Virus record (IMG/VR): IMGVR_UViG_3300042350_004528
Location: 62,001-126,000 of that record
DNA length: 64,000 nucleotides
Reading direction: 5' to 3' (one strand)
Of this stretch, positions 15,127 to 60,524 are shown piece by piece. The position numbers and the translations under genes are program-made. Positions within the stretch are counted from its first letter, which is position 1. Each line of letters begins with the position of its first letter. The notes beneath the pieces are model-generated. The model was given only the letters and a program-made list of their open reading frames with translations. It ran no database searches and was not told where the DNA came from.

Positions 15127-15245
15127 ATAATAATTTTTTTTGTTCTTTAATTATAATCTATTCTTAAATAGTGTAAACTATCTTTTTTTTATTTTTTACC
15201 GTTTACTTGAGATTTCACGGTAATTATAGTTAATAATAGAACAAT

Positions 15246-16237: not shown

Positions 16238-16247
16238 TATAAATATC
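16238..16247 (-). promoter_or_regulatory. Putative late promoter motif GATATTTATA upstream of the tail tube gene
   Basis: Same motif precedes several other structural genes. Confidence 0.55.
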
Positions 16248-19650: not shown

Positions 19651-19756
19651 ATTTGTTTAATTTTAATTTTTTTTATTTACCTTTTACTTACAATAAATAT
19701 CTCTGATTTTTTCAAAAAACAAGAAATACTATTTACTTTTTAAATTATTTTACGAG

Positions 19757-21044: not shown

Positions 21045-21081
21045 ATTATTTTTATTATAAATAGTCTAAACAAACTCTATA

Positions 21082-24570: not shown

Positions 24571-24590
24571 GATATTTATAGATAAATATC
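24571..24590. promoter_or_regulatory. Palindromic back-to-back late promoter motif GATATTTAT-AG-ATAAATATC
   Basis: Perfect 9-bp inverted repeat in the 33-bp gap between divergent genes. Confidence 0.6.
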
Positions 24591-29581: not shown

Positions 29582-29613
29582 TTTGCTTTTTAATGAATAG
29601 TTTACTATCTTTG
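29582..29613 (+). promoter_or_regulatory. Bacteroidota sigma-A promoter TTTG-N20-TATCTTTG for DNA polymerase
   Basis: Exact match to the -33/-7 consensus, 20 nt before the ATG at 29634. Confidence 0.8.
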
Positions 29614-32840: not shown

Positions 32841-32862
32841 TTAACAAATGCATTTTCCTAGA

Positions 32863-32870
32863 TATTTATA
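32863..32870 (+). promoter_or_regulatory. Putative late promoter TATTTATA
   Basis: 17 nt upstream of the ATG at 32888. Confidence 0.55.
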
Positions 32871-35671: not shown

Positions 35672-35703
35672 AAAGGGGTTAAGTGATTAACCCCTTTTTT
35701 TTT
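35672..35703 (+). terminator. Rho-independent terminator
   Basis: AAAGGGGTTAA-GTGA-TTAACCCCTTT followed by a long T-run. Confidence 0.9.
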
Positions 35704-35728
35704 GCGTAATATTTCTTATTATTGTTAT

Positions 35729-36510: not shown

Positions 36511-36524
36511 AATTAATAAAATAC

Positions 36525-36555
36525 TTGTTTTTTAGCGTATTTTTTTTTATTATTG
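36525..36555 (+). promoter_or_regulatory. Variant host-type promoter TTG-N20-TATTATTG
   Basis: 20-nt spacing, 22 nt before the ATG at 36578. Confidence 0.45.
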
Positions 36556-36577
36556 GGTAAAACCCAGTTATAAATAT

Positions 36578-38373: not shown

Positions 38374-38374
38374 T

Positions 38375-39262: not shown

Positions 39263-39263
39263 A

Positions 39264-43203: not shown

Positions 43204-43204
43204 A

Positions 43205-43876: not shown

Positions 43877-44521
43877 ATGGCTAACGGAATTTACAAAATA
43901 ACAGAAGAATTTGAAAAAGCGTTAAGTGATTACACAGGCGCACCATATGTTGTTACATTAGATAACCAATCAAACGGTTTATTTTTATCATTATACTACG
44001 AAAATAATATTAAAAAAAGTATAACAACCCCAAAAATTACAATACCATCAAGAACATACCCATCGGTACCGTGTGAAATAATACACGCGGGCTTAAAAGT
44101 TGATTTTTATCCTATTGAGGGGACAAAATTAAAAGGCGCTTATGAATTAAAGGGTAGTAATGTCTGGGATTCCGCTTTAAGGTTTACCGCAAATATGTAT
44201 TTACCATCAACACATATGTGCATATCTTTTACGGGCCCATATAAACATTTTAAATTAAGTAAAGGAGGTGCTATTTTAACTGATAGCCATGAAGCTTATT
44301 TATGGTTTAAGAGGGCTAGATATAGTGGTAGGAGGGAATGCTCTTATCATGACGATCATTTTGATATGTTGGGTTGGAATTTTTATATGATGCCAGAATT
44401 AGCGGCACGTGGGTTGTTGTTAATGAATCAATTTTACAACATCGATGGCACAAAAAAAGAAAACGCGGATTTAGAATTACCATATCCAGATTTATCAAAG
44501 TTTGATATTTATAAACAATGA
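43877..44521 (+). CDS. DegT/DnrJ/EryC1/StrS-type sugar aminotransferase (short form)
   Basis: FEKALSDYTGAPY...SNGLFL, WDSA, SFTGPYKH...GGAIL, GWNFYM; only 214 aa. Confidence 0.8.
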   Translation: MANGIYKITEEFEKALSDYTGAPYVVTLDNQSNGLFLSLYYENNIKKSITTPKITIPSRTYPSVPCEIIHAGLKVDFYPIEGTKLKGAYELKGSNVWDSALRFTANMYLPSTHMCISFTGPYKHFKLSKGGAILTDSHEAYLWFKRARYSGRRECSYHDDHFDMLGWNFYMMPELAARGLLLMNQFYNIDGTKKENADLELPYPDLSKFDIYKQ

Positions 44522-45824: not shown

Positions 45825-45825
45825 T

Positions 45826-46440
45826 ATGCAAAATACAGTAGAATCTTTAAATTTAATTAAAAAAATATCAGATGAGATTAATAATATGACATTTCATCAC
45901 CATTATTATGTTTTATATGATATAGCTAAAGAATTTGGAACCTCACCAATTAACTATGTTGAAATCGGTTGTTATGCTGGGGGCTCCGCTTGTCTTATGC
46001 TACAAAGGCCAAATACTAACGTAATTAGTATTGATTTAGGTGTACCAATTAAACCAGAAGTAGTTAAAAATAATGTAAAAAAATTAAATATTTTAAATAA
46101 CAATTACAATTATATACAAGGTAACTCACAAAAAAATGAAACGGTTAGTGAGTTAAAAAAATTGGTTGAATTGATAGATATTTTATTTATTGACGGTGAC
46201 CATAGTTATAATGGTGTTATTAACGATTTTAATTTGTATTCTAAAATGGTAAAACCAGGTGGTTATATTATTTTTGATGATTATAACGACAAACAACATA
46301 GCCCTCAAGTTAAAGTAGCTGTTGACGACTTATTAAAAAATAACTATGAGTATGAAATATTTGGTACATTACCAAATATTTTTGGCGCTAGGCCTAGTGA
46401 ATTAAAAGAGGGTAATTGTTTTATAATTAAAAAAAAATAA
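45826..46440 (+). CDS. Class I SAM-dependent methyltransferase (likely glycan O-methyltransferase)
   Basis: YVEIGCYAGGS, LFIDGDHSY, GGYIIFDDY; start moved to ATG 45826. Confidence 0.85.
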   Translation: MQNTVESLNLIKKISDEINNMTFHHHYYVLYDIAKEFGTSPINYVEIGCYAGGSACLMLQRPNTNVISIDLGVPIKPEVVKNNVKKLNILNNNYNYIQGNSQKNETVSELKKLVELIDILFIDGDHSYNGVINDFNLYSKMVKPGGYIIFDDYNDKQHSPQVKVAVDDLLKNNYEYEIFGTLPNIFGARPSELKEGNCFIIKKK

Positions 46441-46441
46441 T

Positions 46442-47122
46442 ATGTTAGCAATTGTCATATCCACGTATCAAAGAAATGATGGTACAACACCCATTCATTT
46501 AACCAAAGCATTAACTTCGATTAAAAATCAAACATACCAAAATTATATGGTATTTTTAATTGGCGATCGCTATGATAATAATGATGAGTTTATAAGATTA
46601 GCGACATCAATAATTGATTCTGATAAAATGGTGTTTGTTAATTTACCAAATGCTGTTGAAAGAGAAAAATATCCGTTTGGTGATGTACGTCTGTGGTCAT
46701 CTGGCGGCGTAAATGCAGTTAATTTCGGTATTAAACTTGCTTTGGAACAAAATTATAATTATATTTGTAGACTAGATCACGATGACTGGTGGGCGCCAGA
46801 ACATTTGGATTTAATAAAAGATAAATTAAACGAAGATCATATAATAATAGCAACGAAAGGTATGCATTTCACTGATAAAATATTACCTGTAAAAGATAGT
46901 AACCCATTCTACCCTAAAAGTTCAGATTTATTACATTCGTCTGTTTGTATAAATTTTAAAAAAACTCCGTTAAGGTATCGCGATGTTTTTGCCGAAGAAG
47001 GTAGACCTTATGCGGCTGATGCTGATTTATGGGATAGATTGTCTTATTATATGGTAAAAAACAATAAAACAGGTTATTTAATAAACAAGGTAACGTGTTA
47101 TCATAGTAATGAAAGAAGATGA
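46442..47122 (+). CDS. Glycosyltransferase family 2
   Basis: IVISTYQR, SIKNQTY, RLDHDDWW. Confidence 0.85.
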   Translation: MLAIVISTYQRNDGTTPIHLTKALTSIKNQTYQNYMVFLIGDRYDNNDEFIRLATSIIDSDKMVFVNLPNAVEREKYPFGDVRLWSSGGVNAVNFGIKLALEQNYNYICRLDHDDWWAPEHLDLIKDKLNEDHIIIATKGMHFTDKILPVKDSNPFYPKSSDLLHSSVCINFKKTPLRYRDVFAEEGRPYAADADLWDRLSYYMVKNNKTGYLINKVTCYHSNERR

Positions 47123-47126
47123 CTAA

Positions 47127-47972
47127 ATGAAAAAGGTAAAAATAATAGCGGAAATAGGGATTAATCACAATGGCGATATTGAAATTGCCAAACAATTAAT
47201 TATGGTGGCGAAAGCGGCTGGATGTGATTACGTAAAATTTCAGAAGAGAAACCCAGATGTGTGTGTTCCAGAAGACCAAAAAAATAAAATTCGCCAAACG
47301 CCATGGGGTGAAATGACATATCTGGAATACAAATGGAGAACTGAATTTAATTATGAACAATACTCTGAAATTGATGAGTTTTGCAAACAAATCGGTATAA
47401 AATGGTTTGTGTCTGTTTGGGACAAAGATAGCGTAGAGTTTATGGATATCTTTAGAAGATTAGGTAAAGCCTACGATGGTACAATGAAAATACCATCAGC
47501 GTTGATTACGGACTTAGAACTTTGTAAATACGCAAGAGCCAATTGTGATAAATTAATTATTTCAACTGGAATGAGTACTGAAAAAGAGGTTAGAGCCTGT
47601 ATTAGTACCTGCAATCCAGATGTTGTTATGCACACAAACTCAACTTACCCATGTCCTGTTGAAGAATTAAATTTGAATTACATAAATTGGCTTAAAAGTT
47701 GGTACCCAGGCTTAGATATAGGATATAGTGGTCACGAGTATGGTTTAGTTACAACATTTGCAACAATACCTATGGGTGTCACTTGGATTGAAAGACATAT
47801 CACCTTGGATAGAAATATGTGGGGTTCCGATCACTCAGCTTCAATAGAACCATCTGGTTTATTCAAGCTAGTTAAAGGTATACGTGACATTGAGTCATCT
47901 TTAAGTATCCCAATGAAACCTAGAGAAGTTTTTGGCGGGGAATTAGCTAAACAAAAAAGCTTGAGGAAATAA
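47127..47972 (+). CDS. neuB: Nonulosonic acid synthase (NeuB/PseI/LegI/Kdn-9-P synthase family); lacks the C-terminal AFP-like domain
   Basis: IIAEIGINHNGD, VKFQ, IISTGM, MHTNSTYP, GYSGHE, IERHITLD...GSDH. Confidence 0.95.
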   Translation: MKKVKIIAEIGINHNGDIEIAKQLIMVAKAAGCDYVKFQKRNPDVCVPEDQKNKIRQTPWGEMTYLEYKWRTEFNYEQYSEIDEFCKQIGIKWFVSVWDKDSVEFMDIFRRLGKAYDGTMKIPSALITDLELCKYARANCDKLIISTGMSTEKEVRACISTCNPDVVMHTNSTYPCPVEELNLNYINWLKSWYPGLDIGYSGHEYGLVTTFATIPMGVTWIERHITLDRNMWGSDHSASIEPSGLFKLVKGIRDIESSLSIPMKPREVFGGELAKQKSLRK

Positions 47973-48298
47973 TGAACATTTACGTAGACGTAGATAACAC
48001 AATAACCGAAACTTCTGGTATGGATTATCAGAATGCTAAACCTATATACGCGAAAATCTCAATCATAAATAAATTATACGATTTAGGCCATACAATTACT
48101 TATTGGACAGCTAGGGGTTCCATTTCAGGTATTGACTATTATTCACTCACGAAATTACAACTAGATTCGTGGGGTGTAAAATATCACAATTTCATGGTTG
48201 GAAAACCAGCTTTTGATCTTTTAATTGATGATAAAACAATAAACAACATTAATGAAAACCTTTTTACATGGGCAACCAAAGAAGAAGAAAAAAACTAA
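47972..48298 (+). CDS. Capless HAD phosphatase (capsule-biosynthesis type)
   Basis: YVDVDNT (DxD), WTARG, GKP, LIDDK. Confidence 0.8.
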   Translation: MNIYVDVDNTITETSGMDYQNAKPIYAKISIINKLYDLGHTITYWTARGSISGIDYYSLTKLQLDSWGVKYHNFMVGKPAFDLLIDDKTINNINENLFTWATKEEEKN

Positions 48299-49005
48299 CA
48301 CCAGAAGAAGAGCTAGAGGCTTTTGAGGCTATTAATCGAGGCCATTCTGGTAATATATTTGATAAAATTAAAATTGATATTAAATCAAAAACACCAAATC
48401 AAAAAAAATTAGTAAACGAAATAAAAGCCAAGGAGATTGTAATATGCTCTGGCTTACCAGGTACTGGTAAAACATTTTTGTCTTGTGCCGTTGCTTTAGA
48501 ATTATTAAAGCACGACCCAAGGTATAAAAAAATTGTTATTGTTAAATCCGTTACTACTTTAAAAGATGAAGAGATTGGGTTTTTGAAAGGAACCATGAAA
48601 GAAAAAATGGAACCGTTTATGTACTCTTTTATGCATAATTTTGAAAAAGTAATCGGTAAGTATAACGTGGAAGCTTTAAGGGCCGCTGGAATGATAGAAG
48701 AGCTCCCAATAGCATACATGAGGGGTATTAATATAGATAATTCAATTACAATCATCGATGAAGCACAAAATATATCAATAGATAACATAAGAACCATAAT
48801 GACACGTCTCGGTGAAAATTCAAAAATGATTTTTCTTGGGGATGAGAACCAAATTGATATGAAGAAAAAGTCTGAAAGTTCATTGAACTTCATCATCAAT
48901 AAGTTTAAAGATTTTGAAGAGGTTGGTACTGTTGTTCTGGGTGAAGACGATGTCGTTAGAAACCCACTAATCAAGAAAATTGAACAGATTTTCAGAGAAA
49001 AGTAA
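48268..49005 (+). CDS. phoH: PhoH-family ATPase
   Basis: GLPGTGKT, YMRG, IIDEAQN, TRLGENSK, GDENQID, VVRNPL. Confidence 0.95.
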   Translation: MGNQRRRKKLTPEEELEAFEAINRGHSGNIFDKIKIDIKSKTPNQKKLVNEIKAKEIVICSGLPGTGKTFLSCAVALELLKHDPRYKKIVIVKSVTTLKDEEIGFLKGTMKEKMEPFMYSFMHNFEKVIGKYNVEALRAAGMIEELPIAYMRGINIDNSITIIDEAQNISIDNIRTIMTRLGENSKMIFLGDENQIDMKKKSESSLNFIINKFKDFEEVGTVVLGEDDVVRNPLIKKIEQIFREK

Positions 49006-49040
49006 TAATAACTGTTTACTTTTTACACTTTAATCATAAG

Positions 49041-49087
49041 TTTGCAGAAATAACGCAAAAATAAACGTTTTGCAAAAATAATGCAAA
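49041..49087 (+). promoter_or_regulatory. Two tandem 19-bp operator-like inverted repeats TTTGCA(G/A)AAATAA(C/T)GCAAA
   Basis: 49041-49059 and 49069-49087, overlapping and following TAAGTTTG (49037-49044) and ending 3 nt before the ATG. Confidence 0.55.
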
Positions 49088-49090
49088 CTT

Positions 49091-49726
49091 ATGATTATTG
49101 GTATTACTATTAACAACATTGTTAGAGACCACATAAGCCAACTTAAAAAGGCTTATACCCTATTAACAGAAGAGGAGGCTATTGAGCCAATTAACCCCTT
49201 TGATTTGGAATCTTCTTTTCCAAATAAAACATCAACAGAATTGATACAGGAGTTTACTGTAACCGAAACTAGTGATGAAATGCCATTAAATGAAGTTAAC
49301 GAAGAATTTAATGTGTATGAGTTTATGTACCACGAAGCCTCATTTGAGATCTTTGGTAGATCTGAGGAATCTATTGATGGTATTGTTCGCAAATTAAAAG
49401 AATACGAAAAAAAATTAAAGGTGAATATTGTTTTAATTAACAAGGAGTCGCCGAGATCAAAGTGTGCTACATTATTCTTTTTATCAAAAAACGGATTTGA
49501 TTTTGATCGAATTTTATTCCCAAAAGATTATAAGAATTTTTGGGATGAAATTGATGTGTTAATAACCGACAACCCAAAGGCACTCAAGAAAAAACCTAAA
49601 AATAAGTATTCAATAAAGGTTAAAAATGATTTTAACATTGACATAAAATCTGATTTTACTATTATTGACTTAAATGATTATAAAACTTTAAAAAGTATAA
49701 TAAAAATGATAAAAGAAAAAGTTTAA
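49091..49726 (+). CDS. NT5C-like HAD-fold protein with a degenerate catalytic motif
   Basis: IIGITINNIVRD in place of IGIDxDxVxRD; DVLITDNP. Confidence 0.55.
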   Translation: MIIGITINNIVRDHISQLKKAYTLLTEEEAIEPINPFDLESSFPNKTSTELIQEFTVTETSDEMPLNEVNEEFNVYEFMYHEASFEIFGRSEESIDGIVRKLKEYEKKLKVNIVLINKESPRSKCATLFFLSKNGFDFDRILFPKDYKNFWDEIDVLITDNPKALKKKPKNKYSIKVKNDFNIDIKSDFTIIDLNDYKTLKSIIKMIKEKV

Positions 49727-49727
49727 A

Positions 49728-50804
49728 ATGGAAAAAATAAACGAGACATTAAAAAACATCGAAAGTGCGATCGAAAAAGTAAAAAACAAAGAAAGTAAAA
49801 TCGTATTTTTATCACCAGACACAAAAGGTACCGCTAGAGCGAGTGTGTCGTACATTTACCGACAAGCCTTAATATTAAAAAATGCGGGCTACACAATTAA
49901 CATTTTACATGAAAAAAATGACTACATCAAAGTTGGTAGTTGGTTGGGTGAGGATTACGACAATTTAGAGCACAAGTCAATCGAAAACAATGATTTGACT
50001 GTCGGGCCTCAGGATATTATTATTGTTCCTGAAATATATGGAAATGTTTTTGAACAAATATTACAACTACCTGTACAAAAAGTTATTCTTGCCCAATCTT
50101 ATGATTATTTGTTAGATAGTTTTTCACCTGGTAAATCCTGGTTAGATTTTGATGTTATGACTTGTTTGACAACATCAAAAACTTTATCCGATACTATAAG
50201 CGAATTAGTACCTTCAAGTAATATTGAATTTGTTAACCCAGGAATCGCTGAATGTTTTTCACCAAGCGAAAAACCGCAAATGCCTGTCATTGCAATTCAT
50301 TGTAGAGATCAAAGAAAAGCGGCAAAAATAATTAAAAGTTTTTATCTAAAATACCCATTATATCGTTTTATTTCTTTTAAAGATATGCACGGAATGACTG
50401 AAAGTGATTTTGCAAAAAATTTAAAAGAATGTGCGTTATCTGTTTGGGTTGACGATGATAGTACATTTGGTACATTTCCTGTTGAATCTATGAAATGCAA
50501 TGTTCCTGTTATCGGTAAAGTGCCTAACATTATTCCAGAGTGGATGAATGATGACAACGGTATTTGGGTTTACGATGAAAATCAAATTGCTGATTTAGCA
50601 TTTAATTATATAAAAAATTGGATGGAAGATAGCTTACCAGAAAACCTATTAAAAGTAAGTGAAACTGTTGATGGTAAGTACACCATGGAATTATTTGAAA
50701 AAGCAACAATTGAGGTCTATGACACAATGTTTAAAAAGTGTCTGGATAGACTTAATAGAATAAAAGAAACCTTTGAAAAAACACTAGAAACTAATGAAAA
50801 CTAA
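49728..50804 (+). CDS. Glycosyltransferase, GT-B-like
   Basis: IIIVPEIYG, VWVDDDSTFGTFPVESMKCNVPVIG. Confidence 0.75.
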   Translation: MEKINETLKNIESAIEKVKNKESKIVFLSPDTKGTARASVSYIYRQALILKNAGYTINILHEKNDYIKVGSWLGEDYDNLEHKSIENNDLTVGPQDIIIVPEIYGNVFEQILQLPVQKVILAQSYDYLLDSFSPGKSWLDFDVMTCLTTSKTLSDTISELVPSSNIEFVNPGIAECFSPSEKPQMPVIAIHCRDQRKAAKIIKSFYLKYPLYRFISFKDMHGMTESDFAKNLKECALSVWVDDDSTFGTFPVESMKCNVPVIGKVPNIIPEWMNDDNGIWVYDENQIADLAFNYIKNWMEDSLPENLLKVSETVDGKYTMELFEKATIEVYDTMFKKCLDRLNRIKETFEKTLETNEN

Positions 50805-51618
50805 TATAGACTTAACAGTTGTTATCCCCGTACACTCAATTGCGGATGAAAAATTTAATGAATTATTGAGCGGTGCGTTAAATAGTATTGAAAATAATAA
50901 TATACACCCATCAAACGTAATGATTGTTAGATGCGGTTGTTCTGAAGTTAAAGAAGTTTTGAAAAAATTTGATTTTTCAAAATATTCTTTTCATGTAACA
51001 TTACTTGAAAATAAAACAGGAAAATCATTTCAAAACCAAATAAACGAAGCTGCAAAAAATATAGAAACAAAATATTTTAGCTTTTTAGAATTTGATGACG
51101 AGTATTCAGTTAATTGGTTTAAAAATGTTAAACAATATACGGAAGCTTACCCTGAAATTGACATGTTTTTACCCATTATAACCGATGTTACAAATGAAAA
51201 TAATTTTGTTGGATTTACTAATGAAGCAGCTTGGGCTTATAATTTTTCTGATACATTAGGCCAGATTGACCATGAGGTTTTAAATGAATTCCCAAACATC
51301 AATCCAGATGGTATGGTTGTTAAAACCGAAGTCTTTAAAAATATCGGCGGTTACAAATCTTCGATTAAACTCACATTTAATTATGAATTTTTACTAAGAT
51401 TTACTAAAGGTGGTAGAAATATTATGGTTATACCTAAAATTGGTTATAAACATGTCAATATGCGACCAGGTTCTTTATTCTGGGAATATAAAAATAGTGA
51501 AATCCCAGAAATGAGAATTACACCAGAAGAAGCTAAGTTTTGGATGGAAGCTGCTAAAAAAGAATTTTTTTATACTGAAGATAGACCAATAACATACGAA
51601 GAAAATGAAACAGCTTAA
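50794..51618 (+). CDS. Glycosyltransferase family 2
   Basis: LTVVIPVH, QINEA, SFLEFDD, YEFLLR. Confidence 0.8.
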   Translation: MKTNIDLTVVIPVHSIADEKFNELLSGALNSIENNNIHPSNVMIVRCGCSEVKEVLKKFDFSKYSFHVTLLENKTGKSFQNQINEAAKNIETKYFSFLEFDDEYSVNWFKNVKQYTEAYPEIDMFLPIITDVTNENNFVGFTNEAAWAYNFSDTLGQIDHEVLNEFPNINPDGMVVKTEVFKNIGGYKSSIKLTFNYEFLLRFTKGGRNIMVIPKIGYKHVNMRPGSLFWEYKNSEIPEMRITPEEAKFWMEAAKKEFFYTEDRPITYEENETA

Positions 51619-51620
51619 AC

Positions 51621-52334
51621 ATGTCAAGAAAGAAAAAAGACCGCAATTATTATGGCGCGGATCAAGAGTCGGCGGTTGTTGCTTTCTTAAACGCTAAGAC
51701 GGTATCGGAGAAAGAAAAAATTTATCGCGAGTTCTTACAAGAACCGATTAATAAAATGATCGAAAGTATTATTAGAACTTACAAACTATATCGACAATCA
51801 TACGAATTTAACGATTTACACGCAGACACTTTGTCTTTTTTAATGACAAAGTTTGACAAATTTAACCCCGAAAAAGGTAATAAATCATTTTCTTATTTTG
51901 GTACTGTTTGTAAAAACTACCTTTACAATGAAATGATGAAGGAATATAAAAAAAGTACTTCATTTACAAATATCGATGATAGTGAACAAGATTTTTTAAG
52001 GAGGGACGATTTACTATATAGAATTGATGAGCAAGAAATTGATTTATCTGATTTTATTGATAAATTATGTAACTCAATAAAGGAAGAGCTTAAAAACGAC
52101 AACTTAAATGAAAATGAATTTAAGGTTGGTCATTCCCTAGTTAAAATATTAGAAGATTGGAAAGAATTATTCGCGCAAAATGATACGGGCAAAAATTCTA
52201 CCAAATTCAACAAAAACTTAATTTTACTCTATATCAGAAACATGACTGGTTTAAATACAAAAGAAATCAGAAACAGTATGAAAAGATATAAAAGTTTATA
52301 CGGCTTATTTAAAGATAGATATTTAGATGAGTGA
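51621..52334 (+). CDS. Phage sigma factor, T4 gp55-like (late transcription)
   Basis: Region-2-like KFDKFNPEKGNKSFSYFGTVCKNYL parallels gp55-type FDPEK..NPFAYFT; no recognisable region-4 HTH. Confidence 0.7.
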   Translation: MSRKKKDRNYYGADQESAVVAFLNAKTVSEKEKIYREFLQEPINKMIESIIRTYKLYRQSYEFNDLHADTLSFLMTKFDKFNPEKGNKSFSYFGTVCKNYLYNEMMKEYKKSTSFTNIDDSEQDFLRRDDLLYRIDEQEIDLSDFIDKLCNSIKEELKNDNLNENEFKVGHSLVKILEDWKELFAQNDTGKNSTKFNKNLILLYIRNMTGLNTKEIRNSMKRYKSLYGLFKDRYLDE

Positions 52335-52357
52335 TATTTATAGTTAAAACAAATACT

Positions 52358-52738
52358 ATGATTAACAATCAAAGAAAGAAAAAAATTGATGTTTCTGAAG
52401 AAAGCATGAAAGAACTCATGCAAGAAACATATAATGAAATCGTTGATGAAAGAAATAAAGCCTTAACTGCTTATAAAAAATTCAGTAAAGACATTAATGA
52501 AAATTCAGATATAGCTTTAGTTGGTAAGATTACAAATGATCTTTTAAAAATAATTGATGGAACCATCGAAAAAAAACTAAGGTTGATTAAAATTCAAAGT
52601 GATATTTTGTATAAAAACGGTAAAGGTGGATCCGCCGATAATGGTGCTCCGATGGTTATTACAGAAGAAGATAGAAAATGGGCCGAGGAGTTTTTAAAAA
52701 AACAAAATAACAATGAAAATGAAAAAGAATACGAATAA
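52358..52738 (+). CDS. Hypothetical helical late protein (possible small terminase)
   Basis: GATATTTATA at 52333-52342 puts the start at ATG 52358; small-terminase role is unverified. Confidence 0.5.
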   Translation: MINNQRKKKIDVSEESMKELMQETYNEIVDERNKALTAYKKFSKDINENSDIALVGKITNDLLKIIDGTIEKKLRLIKIQSDILYKNGKGGSADNGAPMVITEEDRKWAEEFLKKQNNNENEKEYE

Positions 52739-54675
52739 TGAGTCAACAAAGTGAAATATTTTCAAGGTATCGATCACTTTTTAACAGTAGTTCAGTTAGA
52801 CCTCTTGAAAGTGAAACTTCAAGAAAGTTAAACAACATGGACTTTGTTGATTTTTTATTTGAATTAGTAAAAGCGACAAAAGGTCAAAAACAATTTAAAA
52901 ACATTATACTAAAAGGTAGTTTATCTAAACTAAAAAAAAGTGATGAATTAAATAAAACTATAAAAAAAGCTTTATTATCTCAGTTTGGTTGTGATGATAC
53001 TTTAATTATTCCAACGAAATACACAACTAAGTCATCGCTTGGAATCGAATTAGATAAAGGAGAAATTGATCCTTTTGGTATGTTTGGTATTGATCCAGAT
53101 AGTCAAGTTGGTAGATTGATGTACGAAGGTAACGACCCCAAAAAACACATTAATTACTTATTATTTAAATCTCAGGGGGTTGGCGCTATAAACCCAGTTG
53201 AGATAAATTATGAGGGCAGAGTTTTGTTTCGAATATACGCAAAAACACCAAACACACTTGTTTTTAAATTTGGGGAGTTTTACGAAAATAAACTTTACGT
53301 TGAGTGGTTAAGTGATTATATAGAGGCTATGCAACCAATATTTAACACAGTTAATTTTACAACAATATTAACTGATATTATTACTGGAGCAATTTCTTTA
53401 AAGGCCAATAAAAACAAAATAGAAATCAGAAAACAGAGTGGTGTTATCAAAGCTCTGCAAAAAATATTTGGTTTTTGTTCAGAATCCGATGATAATGCTG
53501 GTGCACCAAACCAACCAACTAATAATATATTAAAAGACCCATTATTACAAAATTCAAATTTTAATGGTGAAAATATTATTGGGAATCAAAGTGGCTTGGG
53601 TGACTTTAACAACGCAAACCAACCAAGTGATGACCCTTTTGATTTTGATTTTAATGATTTGGATGATATTGAGCGAGATGCTGATTTAAAGTCTAGGGGT
53701 GTTATTCGGTTTTCTACCTGTGGTGATTTAGATTTGGATATAAATCCAGATGATATTGTAAGTGGTTTAGAATTATTATTTGCTAACGCCGATCAAAATA
53801 ATGTTTACAGTTATGATGGTACAGTAAATAATGAACTCCCAGAAACCGCCACAACCAATCCGTTGTATGATAATTCACAAATCCTACCAAATTCGGACAA
53901 AGCTGCGGATTTTTTTGACAATGCGTTAAAAAATGGTGCAAATAACGCAATAAATCAGGGTGAGACAAATATTATTATTGATTTACCTACAATGAACGCT
54001 GAATTACAGTTAAACATTTTAAAAGCGATACCATATGCGTTAATGCAAATGGTTTTAAGCCCAAAGGTTGTCCTAGTACCCAAACTATTTACGGTATTGA
54101 GTGGCGACACAGGAAAAAAATCGCCAAATGATTTTATAAAAAGTATGATGCCATCTATTTCAAAAATAGGTGAGAACATAACAAGTATGTTAATACAAAA
54201 TATATTTGACGCAATAAAATCGGATCTAACTAGATTAGCTGGAGAATTGGCGATCGCATATCTGAAACAGCGTGGCATGGATTATTTGGCAACCTTAAGA
54301 TCATTATTAAGTTTACTTGGTTTATTTAGTGGTGGTGGCGGGGGCTGTGGGGGTGTTTTAGATAAGTTATTAAAACTATTAAAACTATCAAATTTTGGCC
54401 CGATGCCAATGTTACCACCACCATTAGTACTTATTGCTGGTGCTATAAAACCTGGAATGAACAGCGTGTCAATGATAAACGACATCAAATCTAGTTTAAC
54501 CGAAAAAGGTATAGAAACCGCACCAACATTACCTGATGGCACACCAAACAATATGATGATCGCAATAGAAGAAACTGTTAAAACAATGGTTACACACATT
54601 AAAACAAATTCGACCATACAAACTTTTGGTATATCTGCGGTTGGCCCAGTTCAGGGGTATGGTCAAATTCAATAG
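52738..54675 (+). CDS. Hypothetical structural protein
   Basis: 645-aa ORF in the late baseplate operon. Confidence 0.65.
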   Translation: MSQQSEIFSRYRSLFNSSSVRPLESETSRKLNNMDFVDFLFELVKATKGQKQFKNIILKGSLSKLKKSDELNKTIKKALLSQFGCDDTLIIPTKYTTKSSLGIELDKGEIDPFGMFGIDPDSQVGRLMYEGNDPKKHINYLLFKSQGVGAINPVEINYEGRVLFRIYAKTPNTLVFKFGEFYENKLYVEWLSDYIEAMQPIFNTVNFTTILTDIITGAISLKANKNKIEIRKQSGVIKALQKIFGFCSESDDNAGAPNQPTNNILKDPLLQNSNFNGENIIGNQSGLGDFNNANQPSDDPFDFDFNDLDDIERDADLKSRGVIRFSTCGDLDLDINPDDIVSGLELLFANADQNNVYSYDGTVNNELPETATTNPLYDNSQILPNSDKAADFFDNALKNGANNAINQGETNIIIDLPTMNAELQLNILKAIPYALMQMVLSPKVVLVPKLFTVLSGDTGKKSPNDFIKSMMPSISKIGENITSMLIQNIFDAIKSDLTRLAGELAIAYLKQRGMDYLATLRSLLSLLGLFSGGGGGCGGVLDKLLKLLKLSNFGPMPMLPPPLVLIAGAIKPGMNSVSMINDIKSSLTEKGIETAPTLPDGTPNNMMIAIEETVKTMVTHIKTNSTIQTFGISAVGPVQGYGQIQ

Positions 54676-54685: not shown

Positions 54686-54898
54686 ATGAAAAACGAAAAG
54701 TTACAAGAAATTATAGATAATTGCAAAAACAAACCAAATAAAGATTTGGCAAATGTTTTAGTTACGCTTGAAGTTGATTTTAATAATATTAAATCAACAA
54801 TACTAGAATTAACAGAAACATTAAAAGAACTTGAAATTACATATGATACTGTATACGATGAATTACAAAAGAGATTAAAATTTGAAGATAAAAAATGA
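54686..54898 (+). CDS. Hypothetical coiled-coil protein
   Basis: Start moved to ATG 54686 (MKNEKLQEII...). Confidence 0.6.
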   Translation: MKNEKLQEIIDNCKNKPNKDLANVLVTLEVDFNNIKSTILELTETLKELEITYDTVYDELQKRLKFEDKK

Positions 54899-56529
54899 AG
54901 GCCGATTATAAAATAGGTGTATGTTTTGACAATGAAGATCCTAAGAATTTAGGTAGGATCAGAGCAATTCCTATTGATATTTTGGGTAAATTTGCGACAT
55001 TAAAAGACATAAAGGATTATATAAAAAGAGAGGATGATAAAGCCATAGCCGCTCTAAAATATAATCCTTGGTATTCGACTAAATATCAAAATTTTAAAGA
55101 AAAAGACAAATATGTTTGCGAACCATTTTTACCAAAAAATATTGGTGTTACGCCAAATACGGGTCAATTAGTCAAAATAATAACATATGAGGATTTAGAT
55201 CAAAAACTTGAATTTATTGGGCCGTATACGATAGATCAAATAACTCTTACTGAAGAATATAGAAATGTCGTAAGTAATTTACAAAAAACTTTACCAATAT
55301 CAGATGTTTTACCCAAAAAGGGTAAAACATTTATATCTGGGTACTCAAACGAACAAATTATTCTGGGTGATAATGAATTTTTAATTAGATTAGATCATAT
55401 AAATGGCGGAGAAAAAACGAGAAAAACCAGTTATCCGTTTATACAATTATCACAATTTTTTAATAGTTACGATGTTAAAGAAAAAACAACAACTATTATA
55501 GAAACACCAGACATTCCAATTGATTTTATTTGTGAGTTATTTTTACAATATTCACCAAAAAAAAATTCGAATGAAAAAAACTTTACAGCTGAGGTTATCT
55601 TATATGATGCTTCAAAGCAAATAAATAGAAGAGGTGAGATAGGTTTAACCAAAGACACCTACTCCCCTGCGACACAATATATAACAAATTCATATACAAA
55701 TTATGTTGTTAAACATTATATAAACTCATCTAATGGGGCTGAATTTATAAAAATTATTGAAGATATAATATCTGGGTATAATTCTGGTGGTTTAATAAAA
55801 TACTACGATGTAAATAACACATCATCAGAACAAAAAACTGAAAATAATAGTGCAACAATAATTGTATATAACAATGTACCAGCTACGCCAAACGCTGGGG
55901 GTGCTTTAGGCGACTCAAATATTGTATCAAACATTAAAAGTTGGTTATTTAGACTAACTCCTGGTACAAAATTAACTAATTACCTTGGCAATCTAACGCA
56001 ACCTAATTTACCCGCTAATAATATTGAAACTATTAGATACAAAGATTATGTTAAATTAGATTCGTTAATATCAAAGTATACCGTTGATAAAAAATATGGT
56101 AACTTGGCGATCAATAATTCAAAAACAACAACCGTCAAAAAACCAGTCGCTGAATCTTTAAACAAACCACAATCGGTACATACAATTTATTCTGACAAAT
56201 TTTTATTTTTAAGTAGTTTAAATTCTTTAAATATTATTGATAATTTAAATTTTGACGGACTACCATCCGATAAAATAGCTGAAATTTTAAGCGGATTAAA
56301 TCAAAATGCGAGAACATATGGGTTTATTAGGGGTGAAAAATTAATGGAATTACTTAATGAGATTTTAGATATGTTTAAAAAACATGGTCATCAAGCTGGT
56401 GTAGACCCAACAGCCTCAATAATTCAATCAACACAAGAAGCTGTTGAAAATATAAAAAAGAAAATAAAGGATGAATTAAAGGAAGGTCAAAATAATGTGA
56501 TAATCAATCATAACTTAAGACTTAATTAA
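54895..56529 (+). CDS. Baseplate central spike (gp5/gpV/VgrG-like)
   Basis: N-terminal OB-fold signature DNEDPKNLGRIRA...PFLP...P..G..V; C-terminal RGEKL...HGH (HxH apex motif). Confidence 0.7.
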   Translation: MKADYKIGVCFDNEDPKNLGRIRAIPIDILGKFATLKDIKDYIKREDDKAIAALKYNPWYSTKYQNFKEKDKYVCEPFLPKNIGVTPNTGQLVKIITYEDLDQKLEFIGPYTIDQITLTEEYRNVVSNLQKTLPISDVLPKKGKTFISGYSNEQIILGDNEFLIRLDHINGGEKTRKTSYPFIQLSQFFNSYDVKEKTTTIIETPDIPIDFICELFLQYSPKKNSNEKNFTAEVILYDASKQINRRGEIGLTKDTYSPATQYITNSYTNYVVKHYINSSNGAEFIKIIEDIISGYNSGGLIKYYDVNNTSSEQKTENNSATIIVYNNVPATPNAGGALGDSNIVSNIKSWLFRLTPGTKLTNYLGNLTQPNLPANNIETIRYKDYVKLDSLISKYTVDKKYGNLAINNSKTTTVKKPVAESLNKPQSVHTIYSDKFLFLSSLNSLNIIDNLNFDGLPSDKIAEILSGLNQNARTYGFIRGEKLMELLNEILDMFKKHGHQAGVDPTASIIQSTQEAVENIKKKIKDELKEGQNNVIINHNLRLN

Positions 56530-56542
56530 AATATTTATATTT

Positions 56543-58108
56543 ATGGGAATTTACCGCACATATTTTGACAAGAATAATACGATAGTAAAAGATTCTTTAG
56601 TTAATACAGGCAGAAACCAGGTTTCTGAGCTATACTTTGGTGATAAAGTAAGTAGATTTTTATTTTACTGTTCATTTGATGAGATAAAAAAGAAAGTTGA
56701 AAACAAAGAAATTATCATCAATAATGATGTTAAACATTATTTAAGAATAAAAAATACATCAAATTTTGATGTGTCACCTTTTTTATCCGATAGTAACAAT
56801 CTAGTTTTTACGGATAAATATAGATCCTCTTCATTTGATTTAGAATTAAAACCAGTTAAAGAATTTTGGGATGAGGGTATGGGGTATGATTTCCAACTTA
56901 GCCCATTTTCGAGACCCCAAGACCGCGATTTTAATGAAGAACCGTCAAACTGGTTTAATGGTACCTATGTTAATGAATTTTTAACACCTGGTGTTACATT
57001 AGGTAATAGATTAGCCCTACAACATTTCGATAGGGGTAATGAGGATGTTTTAATGGACATCACTGATTTCGTTAATGATGTGATAACTACTGGGACAACA
57101 ACAGGTATAACAACTGGAATCACAACAGGTATAACAACTGGGATTACTACGGGCATCACCACTGGAATCACAACTGGGGTTACCAGCGGGATTACCACTG
57201 GAATCACAACAGGTATAACAACTGGGATTACCACTGGAATCACAACAGGTATAACAACTGGTATTACTACGGGAGTAACAAGTAGTTACAATGGTTTTTG
57301 TTTAAAATACACAGACCCGTATGAATCTTTGGTTTTTGATGATTCTAGAGCGTATGTTTTAGGGTTATTTACAAAATACACACAAACATTTTTTGAACCG
57401 TTTATTGAAACACACTACAATGATCATATTGTCGATGATAGAGTTGATTTCTTTTTAAATAAATTAAATAGATTGTATCTTTATGTTAATATTGACGGAA
57501 AACTGACTAACTTGGATGAATTACCAACATTTACAATAAATGGGGTTGTAACAATAAACCCATTTATAGTTAAACAACAAACAAAGGGTGTTTATTACGT
57601 TGAATTTTTCGCATCAAGTGAGGTGTATGACTCTTATACTGAATATAAAGATGTTTGGTCTAACATAAAAATTAATGGTGTTAACAGACCAGATATAAGA
57701 TTACGCTTCGTGCCAAAAGAAGACAACGATTACTACCAACTCGGTTCTGATGTCTCGGAACCAATTAGATATGGGATATCAGTTAGCGGTATTAAAAGAG
57801 AAGAAAAGGTTAATCAAGGTGAAAAAAGACGTGTCAACGTTCACCTCAGAAAGCCATATACAGTTGAACAACAAGATGTAAAAACAAATGTATATTACAA
57901 ATTGTATATTAAACAAGGGCCAAATGTTATTGATATACTTGATTGGCAACCAGTTAACAAACTATATAATTCGAATACCTTTAATATCGATACAACCTGG
58001 TTGGTGCCACAAGTATATTACGTTGACATTAAAGTCGAAAGAAATGATGAAATTAATGTCTATAACGAAGAATTAAAATTCACTGTATTAAGTAAATTAA
58101 AAGGATAA
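56543..58108 (+). CDS. Structural protein with a (I/V)TTG x17 repeat and a C-terminal Ig-like region
   Basis: 521-aa ORF after the spike gene; beta-rich flanks. Confidence 0.7.
   Translation: MGIYRTYFDKNNTIVKDSLVNTGRNQVSELYFGDKVSRFLFYCSFDEIKKKVENKEIIINNDVKHYLRIKNTSNFDVSPFLSDSNNLVFTDKYRSSSFDLELKPVKEFWDEGMGYDFQLSPFSRPQDRDFNEEPSNWFNGTYVNEFLTPGVTLGNRLALQHFDRGNEDVLMDITDFVNDVITTGTTTGITTGITTGITTGITTGITTGITTGVTSGITTGITTGITTGITTGITTGITTGITTGVTSSYNGFCLKYTDPYESLVFDDSRAYVLGLFTKYTQTFFEPFIETHYNDHIVDDRVDFFLNKLNRLYLYVNIDGKLTNLDELPTFTINGVVTINPFIVKQQTKGVYYVEFFASSEVYDSYTEYKDVWSNIKINGVNRPDIRLRFVPKEDNDYYQLGSDVSEPIRYGISVSGIKREEKVNQGEKRRVNVHLRKPYTVEQQDVKTNVYYKLYIKQGPNVIDILDWQPVNKLYNSNTFNIDTTWLVPQVYYVDIKVERNDEINVYNEELKFTVLSKLKG
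57083..57286 (+). repeat. 12-bp coding tandem repeat, 17 units (ITTG/TTTG/VTSG/VTSS)
   Basis: Read directly; wobble positions vary between units. Confidence 0.97.
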
Positions 58109-60496: not shown

Positions 60497-60524
60497 AATA
60501 AAAGTATTTATATGAAAATACTTT

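What the first reader, a model, noticed from the sequence alone, without database searches (positions are those of the whole stretch)
51621..52342. Putative late promoter TATTTAT(A) is the reverse complement of the T4 late promoter, with a gp55-like sigma factor as candidate reader
Seen on the coding strand about 12-40 nt upstream of late genes: 14142-14149(-), 16238-16245(-), 19692-19699(-, TATTTATT), 21056-21063(-), 24573-24580(+), 24581-24588(-, TATTTATC), 32863-32870(+), 52335-52342(+), 60505-60512(+), plus variant TATTTAAG at 15163-15170(-). It is often preceded by GA. The polymerase and helicase operons use host-type promoters instead. Known: T4 gp55 reads a single -10 element, TATAAATA. 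Inference: this lineage uses a gp55-like sigma with a different specificity.
Basis: partly seen in the sequence, partly recalled or inferred. Interest (0 to 1): 0.6.

Follow-up and report, generated by a model that had tools for sequence, protein, structure and literature searches.

The report
Late promoter motif and gp55-like sigma
A 299-kb T4-related jumbo phage of Bacteroidota places a short A/T motif (GA/AC-TATTTAT) just upstream of its virion genes, most likely as a late promoter read by a phage-encoded, distant relative of the T4 late sigma factor gp55; this is a new variant of a well-known phage strategy, not a new kind of system.

Summary
All ten listed sites exist. The motif is not enriched in the window as a whole (16 vs 18 expected). 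It is strongly enriched on the coding strand in the 60 nt upstream of genes: [GA][AC]TATTTAT occurs 41 times vs 3.2±1.7 in dinucleotide shuffles genome-wide, and 10 vs 0.7 in the window. Its reverse complement and the T4 motif TATAAATA are not enriched.

Sites precede virion genes (sheath, terminase, gp23-type capsid operon). They are absent from about 60 early genes, which carry Bacteroidota-type -33 TTTG / -7 TAnnTTTG promoters.

The motif start lies mostly 19-25 nt before the ATG. In relatives there is a sharp peak at 11 nt, which implies leaderless mRNAs and places the motif at about -11 to -5.

ORF 51621-52334 is a divergent sigma-70-family protein:
- The best structural match of its sigma-2 domain is T4 gp55 (Z 10.6).
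- 24 of 68 family members hit the gp55 PHROG family.
- It carries an extra sigma-4-like C-terminal domain that gp55 lacks.
- No gp33 or gp45 was found in the genome.

A second, RpoS/RpoD-like sigma elsewhere in the genome is a rival reader. However, two cultured phages have only the 237-aa type and still show the motif. No transcription start was mapped. Verdict: partly supported, and a new variant of a known kind.

The parts
51621..52334 (+). Gene for a 237-aa divergent sigma-70-family protein ('sigma-237'): an N-terminal sigma-2 domain (about residues 9-115), an acidic linker, and a C-terminal helical, sigma-4-like domain (about residues 137-237). It is the candidate reader of the late motif.
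   Evidence: Pfam Sigma70_r2 E 0.006, below cut-off; 28 of 68 family members hit Sigma70_r2. NCBIfam sigma70-ECF superfamily 5e-6, below cut-off. AF2 model pLDDT 92. VIA best match T4 gp55 7d7d_F, Z 10.6, rmsd 2.6, 96 aa, tied with SigB at 10.2; the C-terminal domain matches sigma-H and sigma-E region 4 at Z 5.5-6.2. 24 of 68 family members hit phrog_234, the gp55 family. Complex model with F. johnsoniae RpoC clamp helices scores 0.62 vs best control 0.01.
52333..52342 (+). Late-type promoter element GATATTTATA overlapping the stop codon of the sigma gene, 23 nt before the ATG of the 126-aa gene 52358-52738.
   Evidence: TATTTAT is kept at this place in 51 of 52 distinct relatives' intergenic sequences, down to 43% protein identity, while the flanks vary. 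A copy also lies at the same place in Flavobacterium phage immuto.
14142..14151 (-). Late-type element ACTATTTATA, d=24 to gene 13454-14125. This is the first gene of an operon that holds the 932-, 2485- and 974-aa ORFs.
15163..15172 (-). Variant ACTATTTAAG, d=44 to gene 14371-15126. Uncertain member.
   Evidence: It scored below the PWM threshold used.
16238..16247 (-). Late-type element GATATTTATA, d=43 to the 162-aa gene 15714-16202. That gene lies just downstream of the sheath gene and has the size and position of a tail tube gene (inference).
19692..19701 (-). Late-type element GATATTTATT, d=49 to the tail sheath gene 16558-19650.
   Evidence: Sheath Pfam domains. A metatranscriptome contig covers 19322-19672 and ends before the motif; this is not decisive.
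21056..21065 (-). Late-type element ACTATTTATA, d=19 to gene 20526-21044.
24571..24590 (.). Two back-to-back divergent late-type elements. GATATTTATA (+, 24571-24580) is d=24 to gene 24597-25688, which has an adaptor-like C-terminus. GATATTTATC (-, 24581-24590) is d=25 to gene 23397-24563, of the GP88 family.
32861..32870 (+). Late-type element GATATTTATA, d=25 to gene 32888-33418.
44504..44513 (+). Late-type element GATATTTATA inside the end of the preceding gene, d=12 to the ATG of gene 44518-45240. Candidate leaderless start.
56532..56539 (+). TATTTATA, d=11 to the ATG of gene 56543-58108. Candidate leaderless start.
   Evidence: The d=11 peak in relatives is.
60505..60512 (+). TATTTATA, d=20 to the GTG start (60525) of the large terminase gene.
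29583..29613 (+). Host-type (Bacteroidota) promoter TTG-N20-TATCTTTG before the DNA polymerase gene 29634-32840. Shown for contrast; it is not part of the late class.
36523..36555 (+). Weak host-type promoter (TTG-N20-TATTATTG) at the head of the roughly 16-kb glycosyltransferase-rich operon that ends with the sigma-237 gene. It is the probable source of sigma-237 mRNA (inference).
   Evidence: The only strong terminator on the + strand of 32800-52700 is at 35672-35697, upstream of this site.

Best explanation
The element (G/A)(A/C)TATTTAT(A/T) is the single, -10-like core of the late promoters of this T4-superfamily jumbo phage of a Bacteroidota host.

Proposed mechanism:
1. Host RNA polymerase with the host primary sigma transcribes early and replication genes from -33 TTTG / -7 TAnnTTTG promoters.
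2. One such weaker promoter (about 36548) drives the long operon that ends with gene 51621-52334.
3. The product of that gene, a 237-aa divergent sigma related to T4 gp55 in its sigma-2 domain, binds the beta-prime clamp helices of host core polymerase. It redirects the polymerase to the TATTTAT elements in front of virion and packaging genes.
4. Transcription starts about 11-12 nt downstream of the first T of the motif. Leaders are therefore very short (about 10 nt), or absent where the motif lies 11-12 nt before the ATG.

Unlike T4 gp55, this sigma carries its own C-terminal sigma-4-like domain. It therefore probably needs neither a gp33-type co-activator nor a sliding clamp.

Shown here: the motif, its enrichment, strand bias, spacing, conservation and gene-class association; the sigma fold and its distant gp55 kinship. 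Inferred: that it is a promoter, the start position, the timing, and which sigma reads it.
For: Motif statistics and gene classes:
- Enrichment, strand specificity and spacing are shown.
- 43 PWM sites lie in the sense orientation vs 13 antisense. They are confined to the structural half of the genome (0-185 kb) and are absent from the early region at 186-215 kb.
- Downstream genes include the tail sheath, the large terminase, the gene heading the gp23-type capsid operon and a virion structural protein, and a 5316-aa ORF.
- Host-type promoters precede the DNA polymerase, SNF2 and UvrD helicases, a DnaG-like primase and a CCA-adding enzyme.

Conservation:
- TATTTAT is kept after the sigma gene in 51 of 52 distinct relatives' intergenic sequences.
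- The motif is enriched upstream of genes in three identity tiers of relatives, for example GATATTTA 43 sense vs 2 antisense in the 43-47% tier.

Geometry:
- There is a sharp lower peak at d=11-12 and almost nothing shorter.
- This mirrors 13 host-type promoters whose -7 box sits exactly 12 nt before the ATG.
- The motif therefore sits at about -11 to -5, where the host -7 box sits.

The sigma:
- Family-invariant Y92 aligns with gp55 Y97, the residue that stacks on the flipped A-12, in two independent alignments (residue roles from PMC7892883).
- The complex model places sigma residues 65-79 on RpoC 299-319, with score 0.62 vs best control 0.01. The runs agree in at least 64% of contacts and the partner's pLDDT is at least 70. 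The mark was reached by 51 of 78 solved complexes and 2 of 108 mismatched pairs.

Linking this sigma, not the other one, to the motif:
- The complete genomes of Flavobacterium phage vB_FspM_immuto and Microcystis phage Mel-JY01 encode a homologue of the 237-aa protein.
- Neither genome has a homologue of the 265-aa sigma or any Pfam sigma region 2 or 4 match.
- Both still show ATATTTAT enriched on the coding strand upstream of genes: 19 vs 2.6±1.6 and 20 vs 3.2±1.7.
Against: - No transcription start site, timing or binding data exist. The only RNA data are metatranscriptome contigs, which cannot show 5' ends. One relative's fragment even spans the sheath promoter.
- The window protein itself falls below the curated cut-offs of Pfam and NCBIfam and has no PHROG hit. 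The hhalign probability to T4 gp55 is only 33%.
- The structural lead of gp55 over SigB is within the tie margin.
- The genome encodes a second, canonical sigma that could read the motif.
- The sigma-4 assignment of the C-terminal domain rests on Z 5.5-6.2 only. No clear -35 element accompanies the motif: GAAC in 15% of sites vs 4% in controls, CTTT in 23% vs 6%.
- Gene calls were made with a simple home-made caller, so some distances may be off.
- Related loci are not independent samples.
Confidence: 0.6

Rival explanations
1. The motif is a late promoter, but it is read by the phage's other sigma. This is the 265-aa RpoS/RpoD-like protein (genome 12235-13032, outside the window), which is made from a host-type promoter together with a primase-like gene. 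On this view the 237-aa protein has another role, for example a middle class of promoters or an anti-sigma-like function.
For: The 265-aa protein has clear regions 1.2, 2 and 4 and matches RpoS and RpoD models at 1e-55. It lies in an operon behind a host-type promoter with a DnaG-like gene, so it would be available before late genes. It is conserved in three large relatives. TATTTAT resembles a canonical TATAAT-type -10 element.
Against: Immuto and Mel-JY01 lack any homologue of it and any Pfam sigma region 2 or 4, yet they have the motif. A group-1/2-like sigma would be expected to use a -35 (or -33) element as well, and late sites lack one.
Confidence: 0.12
2. The motif is a promoter read by a host factor. 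This would be either the host primary sigma, altered by a phage protein or by DNA modification, or a host alternative sigma. Neither phage sigma would be the specificity factor.
For: The motif shares TA..T.T with the host -7 box TAnnTTTG and sits at the same distance from leaderless start codons. Many phages redirect host sigma with small appropriator proteins (general knowledge, e.g. T4 MotA/AsiA).
Against: The same motif is enriched in Mel-JY01, whose recorded host is a cyanobacterium, and there Shine-Dalgarno-like leaders follow it. So the motif follows the phage lineage rather than the host's promoter grammar. Late sites lack both TTTG elements of the host consensus.
Confidence: 0.12
3. 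The motif is not a promoter. It would be an RNA-level or other DNA signal in front of genes, for example a translation-initiation enhancer in a host without Shine-Dalgarno pairing, a processing site, or a regulator-binding site.
For: The distance to the ATG is tight (mostly 19-25 nt). Bacteroidota use A/U-rich unstructured leaders rather than Shine-Dalgarno sequences (general knowledge).
Against: - The motif is absent from all of the roughly 60 early genes, which share the same composition and translation system.
- Distances range from 11 to about 65 nt, with a hard lower limit at 11, as expected of a promoter and not of a ribosome site.
- In Mel-JY01, Shine-Dalgarno-like sequences lie between the motif and the ATG.
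- It occurs as divergent back-to-back pairs between divergent genes.
Confidence: 0.06

Closest known systems
Phage T4 late transcription: gp55 (late sigma), promoter TATAAATA, co-activator gp33 and sliding clamp gp45
   Same: - The phage is of the T4 superfamily (gp23-type capsid protein).
- Late promoters consist essentially of one 8-bp A/T-only element near -10, with no clear -35.
- In the same orientation the element shares 6 of 8 positions with TATAAATA.
- The candidate sigma has a sigma-2 domain whose best structural match is gp55, and family members hit the gp55 PHROG family.
- The tyrosine that stacks on A-12 in gp55 (Y97, PMC7892883) aligns with a family-invariant tyrosine.
   Different: - The consensus is TATTTAT(A), not TATAAATA, and the T4 motif is not enriched.
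- The element appears to lie 1-2 bp closer to the start.
- The protein is 237 aa against 185 aa, and has an extra C-terminal sigma-4-like domain.
- There is no conserved SLDFLYEAND-type clamp-binding tail.
- gp55 pocket residues H95 and T99 are not conserved.
- No gp33, gp45 or beta-clamp was detected in the genome.
'Group 2' jumbo phages of Iyer et al. 2021 (PMC7824862): gp23-type capsid, no phage RNA polymerase, phage sigma factors of a minimal type and an RpoD-like type, plus gp33
   Same: This genome fits the description: gp23-type capsid protein, family B DNA polymerase, one RpoD/RpoS-like sigma and one divergent small sigma.
   Different: That paper gives no promoter consensus for these phages. 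The small sigma here is not the one-domain 'minimal' form. No gp33 orthologue was found here.
Bacteroidota primary-sigma promoters (-33 TTTG, -7 TAnnTTTG; from the literature on Bacteroides and Flavobacterium, recalled not re-read)
   Same: Same position relative to the start codon of leaderless genes (12 vs 11-12 nt). Shares the TA dinucleotide and a T-rich centre. This fits use of the host core enzyme.
   Different: The late element ends in AT(A) rather than TTG and has no -33 TTTG. The two classes partition cleanly between early/replication genes and virion genes.
Sigma cascades of Bacillus phage SPO1 (gp28, then gp33/gp34)
   Same: Phage-encoded sigma factors replace the host sigma on host core polymerase to switch temporal classes. 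This phage also has two phage sigmas.
   Different: No sequence kinship was tested. The SPO1 sigmas recognise bipartite -35/-10 promoters, whereas only one strong element is seen here.

Membership tests
T4 gp55 late sigma family (phrog_234) | Sequence or profile match to the family | tested here: inconclusive
   The window protein has no PHROG hit at E<=0.1. However, 24 of 68 aligned family members hit phrog_234 (best E 7.5e-6), far more than hit any other sigma PHROG family. T4 gp55 hits phrog_234 at 2.9e-69. hhalign of the family profile vs T4 gp55 gives E 4.5e-4, 104 columns, probability 33%. HMMER of the profile vs PDB gp55 gives E 0.8.
T4 gp55 late sigma family (phrog_234) | Sigma region 2 homology domain fold | tested here: met
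   AF2 model with pLDDT 92. The best of 48,161 chains is gp55 7d7d_F: Z 10.6, rmsd 2.6 A, 96 residues aligned. It is tied within 1 Z unit with S. aureus SigB.
T4 gp55 late sigma family (phrog_234) | Pocket residues for the flipped bases A-12 (Y97), A-9 (N13, H95) and A-8 (T99) (PMC7892883) | tested here: inconclusive
   Y97 aligns with family-invariant Y92, and F86 with F81. H95 aligns with F90 and T99 with G94, so those two are not conserved. The alignments are of low confidence.
T4 gp55 late sigma family (phrog_234) | Minimal architecture: no sigma-4 domain, and a C-terminal tail that binds the sliding clamp | tested here: not met
   Residues 137-237 form an additional helical domain that matches sigma region 4 structures (Z 5.5-6.2), and whole-length alignments to SigI, sigma-32, sigma-S and sigma-28 exist. 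The C-termini of the family are not conserved and do not resemble the SLDFLYEAND of gp55.
T4 gp55 late sigma family (phrog_234) | Works with the gp33 co-activator and the gp45 clamp encoded by the same phage | tested here: inconclusive
   Own-genome searches found nothing with T4 gp33, phrog_254, T4 gp45, PF09116, PF02916 or PF00712. Small divergent proteins can escape such searches.
T4 gp55 late sigma family (phrog_234) | Cognate promoter: a single -10-like element TATAAATA | tested here: not met
   TATAAATA upstream of genes: 9 vs 5.1±2.3 in shuffles. TATTTAT: 50 vs 12.6±3.4. The single-element architecture itself is shared.
Sigma-70 family | Region 2 recognised by curated models | tested here: inconclusive
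   Pfam PF04542: 16.7 bits against a cut-off of 24; 28 of 68 family members match at E<=0.01, best 4e-7. TIGR02937: 26.2 bits against a cut-off of 42.9. The family profile matches SigA region 2 at E 0.01.
Sigma-70 family | Binds the beta-prime clamp helices of core RNA polymerase through region 2.2 | tested here: met
   Complex model with F. johnsoniae RpoC 180-420: score 0.62, best of 3 controls 0.01. The mark was reached by 51 of 78 solved complexes and 2 of 108 mismatched pairs. Runs agree in at least 64% of contacts and the partner's pLDDT is at least 70. Contacts are sigma 65-79 with RpoC 299-319. This is a model only, and the pass may reflect likeness to solved sigma complexes.
Sigma-70 family | Region 4 helix-turn-helix | tested here: inconclusive
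   No Pfam region 4 hit in any of the 68 members. The only evidence is structural matches at Z 5.5-6.2.
Bacteroidota primary-sigma promoter class | -33 TTTG and -7 TAnnTTTG about 20 bp apart | tested here: not met
   Late sites show no TTTG enrichment upstream (10% vs 10% in controls) and end in AT(A), not TTG. The host-type class is separate and abundant elsewhere in the genome.

The most novel reading that the evidence does not exclude
The 237-aa protein may be an 'unsplit' form of the T4 late-transcription machinery. One polypeptide would combine a gp55-type sigma-2 domain with its own flap-binding, sigma-4-like domain, so that late transcription in this large, mostly uncultured clade needs neither gp33 nor a DNA-loaded sliding clamp. 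More than 1,200 clusters at 50% identity match the protein at E<=0.001, and they sit on contigs of up to 362 kb. If this is right, the replication-coupled, clamp-activated system of T4 would be a derived state. The change from TATAAATA to TATTTATA would map to the altered -9/-10 pocket of the sigma-2 domain.
Probability: 0.25. Interest if true: 0.65.

Novelty: new variant of a known kind. Interest (0 to 1): 0.5.

Why it matters
- It gives a testable late-promoter consensus and a candidate specificity factor for a large, mostly uncultured clade of freshwater and marine jumbo phages of Bacteroidota. For two cultured phages, the homologous gene is currently annotated as hypothetical.
- It allows genes of unknown function in these genomes to be sorted into early and late classes from sequence alone.
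- It offers a natural specificity variant of the gp55 / -10-element pair: two base changes in the promoter, with altered pocket residues in the sigma. This could be used to study how minimal sigma factors read single-stranded -10 DNA.
- It raises the question of whether clamp-coupled late transcription is ancestral in the T4 superfamily.
- The cultured Flavobacterium phage immuto with its host LMO8 makes the experiments feasible.

Tried and rejected
- **Whole-window enrichment.** The motif is not enriched over the whole window, so this was replaced by a positional test.
- **DNA similarity to known phages.** None found.
- **PHROG and Pfam on the neighbouring genes** (52358-52738, 52738-54675, 54895-56529 and others). 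No informative hits.
- **RNA evidence.** Five metatranscriptome runs hold parts of the region, but only as assembled contigs. In run X1 a 351-nt contig identical to the window covers 19322-19672 (the 5' part of the sheath gene) and stops 15 nt short of the predicted start. In run X3 a fragment from a roughly 92%-identical relative spans the promoter. No 5' ends can be read, so the result is inconclusive.
- **Foldseek against PDB.** Only weak global matches (E >= 0.05), although almost all were sigma factors. The domain-wise VIA search was more informative.
- **A third promoter class.** TATTATTG occurs at 6 upstream sites. It looks like a weak variant of the host -7 box with the same -33 spacing, not a separate class.
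- **An ECF-like -35 element (GAAC) upstream of the late motif.** Present in only 15% of sites, so it was judged weak.
- **Homology of the C-terminal domain to gp33.** No support.
- **Homology between the two phage sigmas.** None detectable by hhalign.
- **The search for related loci with the 68-sequence alignment.** It failed for lack of a conserved stretch, so the single protein was used instead.
- **Literature.** No paper in the library mentions TATTTATA together with 'late promoter' and phage, and the papers found that mention immuto concern other topics and were not read.
- **Reverse-complement or template-strand reading of a T4-type motif.** Considered, but not testable here. It is judged unlikely, because the in-register two-base difference is the simpler account.
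Full report
**Context.** The window is bases 62001-126000 of a 298,833-bp virus record with about 34% G+C (30% in the stretch around the finding). The phage belongs to the T4 superfamily.
- Its major capsid protein (genome 131074-132660) matches Pfam Gp23 at 1e-74.
- The window holds a tail sheath gene (16558-19650), a large terminase (60525-62309), a family B DNA polymerase (29634-32840) and an SNF2 helicase.
- Genes lack Shine-Dalgarno sequences.
- About 60 small genes at genome 186-215 kb each carry a strong Bacteroidota-type promoter (aaaTTTGCA..TTAAA..acTTATCTTTG, that is -33 TTTG and -7 TAnnTTTG) and hairpin terminators. The host is therefore a member of the Bacteroidota.
- The genome fits the 'group 2' jumbo phages of Iyer et al.: gp23 capsid, no phage RNA polymerase, and phage sigma factors of two types (PMC7824862).

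**The observation.** All ten listed sites are present. Counted over the whole window the motif is not enriched (TATTTATA 16 vs 18.0 expected). The signal lies entirely in position and strand.

I made simple gene calls (335 genes) and shuffled each 60-nt upstream region, preserving dinucleotides:

| Pattern, coding strand | Observed | Shuffles |
|---|---|---|
| TATTTAT, genome | 50 | 12.6±3.4 |
| [GA][AC]TATTTAT, genome | 41 | 3.2±1.7 |
| [GA][AC]TATTTAT, window | 10 | 0.7±0.8 |
| Reverse complement, genome | 21 | 18.5 |
| T4 motif TATAAATA, genome | 9 | 5.1 |

- An unbiased k-mer ranking of upstream regions returns this element and the host-type promoter as the two top signals.
- The consensus is (G/A)(A/C)TATTTAT(A/T), followed after 3-4 nt by A-rich positions.
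- The start of the motif lies mostly 19-25 nt before the ATG.
- Two further window sites fit: 44506 (d=12) and 56532 (d=11).

**Which genes carry it.** A position-weight scan finds 43 genes with a site in sense orientation and 13 in antisense; several of the antisense sites I inspected belong to a divergent neighbour. All lie outside the early region.
- Downstream genes with a recognisable function are virion or packaging genes: sheath, terminase, an adaptor-like protein, the gene heading the capsid operon, a 'virion structural protein' and a 5316-aa ORF.
- Host-type promoters precede the DNA polymerase, SNF2 and UvrD helicases, a DnaG-like primase, a CCA-adding enzyme and the many small early genes.
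- 'Late' is thus an inference from gene function, not from timing data.

**Is it a promoter, and where would transcription start?**
- Thirteen host-type promoters place the -7 box exactly 12 nt before the ATG. With the published geometry of that box, this puts the start on the A of the ATG, giving leaderless mRNAs.
- The late element shows the same behaviour. In related phages its distance distribution has a sharp peak at 11 nt and almost nothing shorter.
- In the distant clade, the gene after the sigma gene keeps a conserved N-terminus starting at that ATG, while the upstream sequence varies.
- The element therefore occupies about -11 to -5, the place of the host -7 box. Ordinary sites give leaders of about 10 nt.
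- Upstream there is only a weak signal: GAAC in 15% of sites vs 4% in controls, and CTTT in 23% vs 6%. The promoter is essentially a single element, as in T4.
- A translation signal is unlikely. The element is absent from all early genes. Its distances range up to about 65 nt with a hard lower limit. In Microcystis phage Mel-JY01, Shine-Dalgarno-like sequences lie between it and the ATG.
- Metatranscriptome contigs cover the sheath gene up to 15 nt short of the predicted start, but they cannot show 5' ends.

**Conservation.** The 237-aa protein has more than 1,100 homologues in the 90%-clustered protein collection, and 1,241 representatives of 50%-identity clusters match it at E<=0.001. They sit on contigs of up to 362 kb.
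- In 80 related viral loci (100-43% identity), TATTTAT directly follows the gene in 51 of 52 distinct intergenic sequences, although the flanks differ.
- Upstream regions in all three identity tiers show the same strand-specific enrichment.
- These loci are related to one another, so this is conservation rather than independent replication.

**The candidate reader.** ORF 51621-52334 scores below the curated cut-offs for sigma region 2 (Pfam 16.7 bits, NCBIfam sigma70-ECF 26.2 bits).
- 28 of 68 family members hit Sigma70_r2, and the family profile matches SigA region 2 at E 0.01.
- An AlphaFold model from the family alignment is confident (pLDDT 92).
- In a search of 48,161 chains, the best match is T4 gp55 in the late-transcription complex (7d7d_F: Z 10.6, rmsd 2.6 A, 96 residues). 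It is tied with SigB (10.2) and followed by many sigma-2 domains.
- 24 of 68 family members hit phrog_234 'late sigma transcription factor'. This is the family of T4 gp55 (2.9e-69).
- hhalign of the family profile against T4 gp55 gives E 4.5e-4 over 104 columns. Against the phage's other sigma it finds nothing.
- Two independent alignments place family-invariant Y92 on gp55 Y97, the residue that stacks on the flipped A-12. They place F81 on F86. Pocket residues H95 (for A-9) and T99 (for A-8) are replaced (residue roles from PMC7892883).
- A complex model places residues 65-79 on the clamp helices of Flavobacterium johnsoniae RpoC. The score is 0.62 and the best of 3 controls is 0.01. The mark was reached by 51 of 78 solved complexes and 2 of 108 mismatched pairs. 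Runs agree in at least 64% of contacts and the partner's pLDDT is at least 70. This supports sigma-like binding but does not show it.

**How it differs from gp55.** The protein is longer. Residues 137-237 form a further helical domain that matches sigma region 4 structures at modest Z (5.5-6.2), and the whole chain aligns in order with SigI, sigma-32, sigma-S and sigma-28.
- The C-termini of the family are not conserved and do not resemble the clamp-binding tail of gp55.
- No gp33, gp45 or beta-clamp was found in the genome, and the C-terminal domain shows no likeness to gp33.
- I therefore file the protein as a gp55-related sigma, not as a gp55 orthologue.

**The motif compared with T4.** TATTTATA is indeed the reverse complement of TATAAATA. 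Because the frame TAT..ATA is palindromic, the two also differ at only positions 4 and 5 when read in the same orientation. In T4 numbering these are -10 and -9. A-12 and A-8, which gp55 inserts into deep pockets, are kept, and the base at -9, which sits in a shallow pocket made by N13 and H95, is changed (PMC7892883). The replacement of H95 in this family fits that picture. This is an inference from low-confidence alignments.

**The rival sigma.** Outside the window (genome 12235-13032, minus strand) lies a 265-aa sigma with regions 1.2, 2 and 4. It matches RpoS and RpoD models at 1e-55. It sits in an operon behind a host-type promoter with a primase-like gene and is conserved in three large relatives. 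It could in principle read the late element.

The best evidence against this comes from two cultured phages, Flavobacterium phage vB_FspM_immuto (160 kb) and Microcystis phage Mel-JY01 (190 kb).
- Both encode homologues of the 237-aa protein, annotated as hypothetical.
- Neither has a homologue of the 265-aa sigma or any Pfam sigma region 2 or 4 match.
- Both still show ATATTTAT enriched on the coding strand upstream of genes: 19 vs 2.6±1.6 and 20 vs 3.2±1.7. The reverse complement is not enriched.
- The motif thus travels with the 237-aa family across hosts with different promoter grammars. This also argues against a purely host-encoded reader.

**How the sigma gene itself is expressed.** The gene closes a roughly 16-kb operon rich in glycosyltransferases. 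The only strong terminator on that strand lies upstream at 35672-35697. A weak host-type promoter (TTG-N20-TATTATTG) lies at about 36523-36555. That would make the sigma a middle-type product that then switches on late promoters. This step is inferred.

**Verdict.** The most likely account (confidence about 0.6) is a late-promoter class with the core TATTTAT at about -11 to -5. It would be read by host core polymerase carrying the 237-aa gp55-related sigma. This is a new variant of a known kind.

Noticed in passing
Genome G000:C1, last ~75 bases (outside the window): The contig ends in an Illumina P5 adapter-like tail (AATGATACGGCGACCACCG), preceded by about 55 nt that repeat the contig start. 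This points to a circular or permuted assembly with adapter contamination.
   Followed up: no
Genome 186,000-215,000 (outside the window; loci L092, L093): An early region of about 60 small genes, each with a near-identical Bacteroidota-type promoter (-33 TTTGCA, -7 TTATCTTTG) and G+C-rich hairpin terminators. In 13 cases the -7 box lies exactly 12 nt before the ATG, implying leaderless mRNAs.
   Followed up: partly
Genome 12235-13032, minus strand (L001:1063-1860): A second phage sigma factor of 265 aa, RpoS/RpoD-like, with regions 1.2, 2 and 4. It lies in an operon with a DnaG-like primase gene behind a host-type promoter. Its target promoters are unknown.
   Followed up: partly
window 36578-51618 (+): A long operon rich in glycosyltransferases: GT4-like 36578-37804, GT29 sialyltransferase-like 41223-42374, GT1 49728-50804 and GT2 50794-51618. 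It lies directly upstream of the sigma gene. Whether it modifies DNA, virion proteins or host glycans is unknown.
   Followed up: no
window 3173-10630 (-), and genome 139607-155557, 27009-34673, 54702-61931: Giant ORFs of 2485, 5316, 2554 and 2409 aa. The 2485-aa window ORF had no Pfam match; the other three were not scanned. The 5316-aa ORF has a late-type motif 31 nt upstream.
   Followed up: no
Genome ~238,000, 263,000-275,000 and 275,000-281,000 (L095-L097): At least 26 tRNA genes in clusters, covering most amino acids.
   Followed up: partly
window 24571-24590: Two late-type motifs lie back to back on opposite strands, with cores at 24573-24579 (+) and 24582-24588 (-), between divergent genes. 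Similar divergent pairs occur at genome 170157/170182 and 178764/178791.
   Followed up: no
Genome 258812-260896 (L096:3812-5896): A fusion of a CCA-adding / poly(A) polymerase head domain with a HAD domain of the 'Swiss Army Knife' RNA-repair type, behind a host-type -7 box. It suggests tRNA repair.
   Followed up: no
L101 (Flavobacterium phage immuto, record 60,000-76,000): Immuto early genes use a promoter AGTTGC-N17-TATATTTAGGTA. Its -7 box differs from the late ATATTTAT element mainly in the last base or two. The two classes are thus very close in sequence in that phage.
   Followed up: no
L102 and Mel-JY01 genome: Microcystis phage Mel-JY01 has 34% G+C and shares the sigma family and the motif with Flavobacterium phages. 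Its genes have Shine-Dalgarno-like leaders. The recorded cyanobacterial host therefore contrasts with its Bacteroidota-phage relatives.
   Followed up: no
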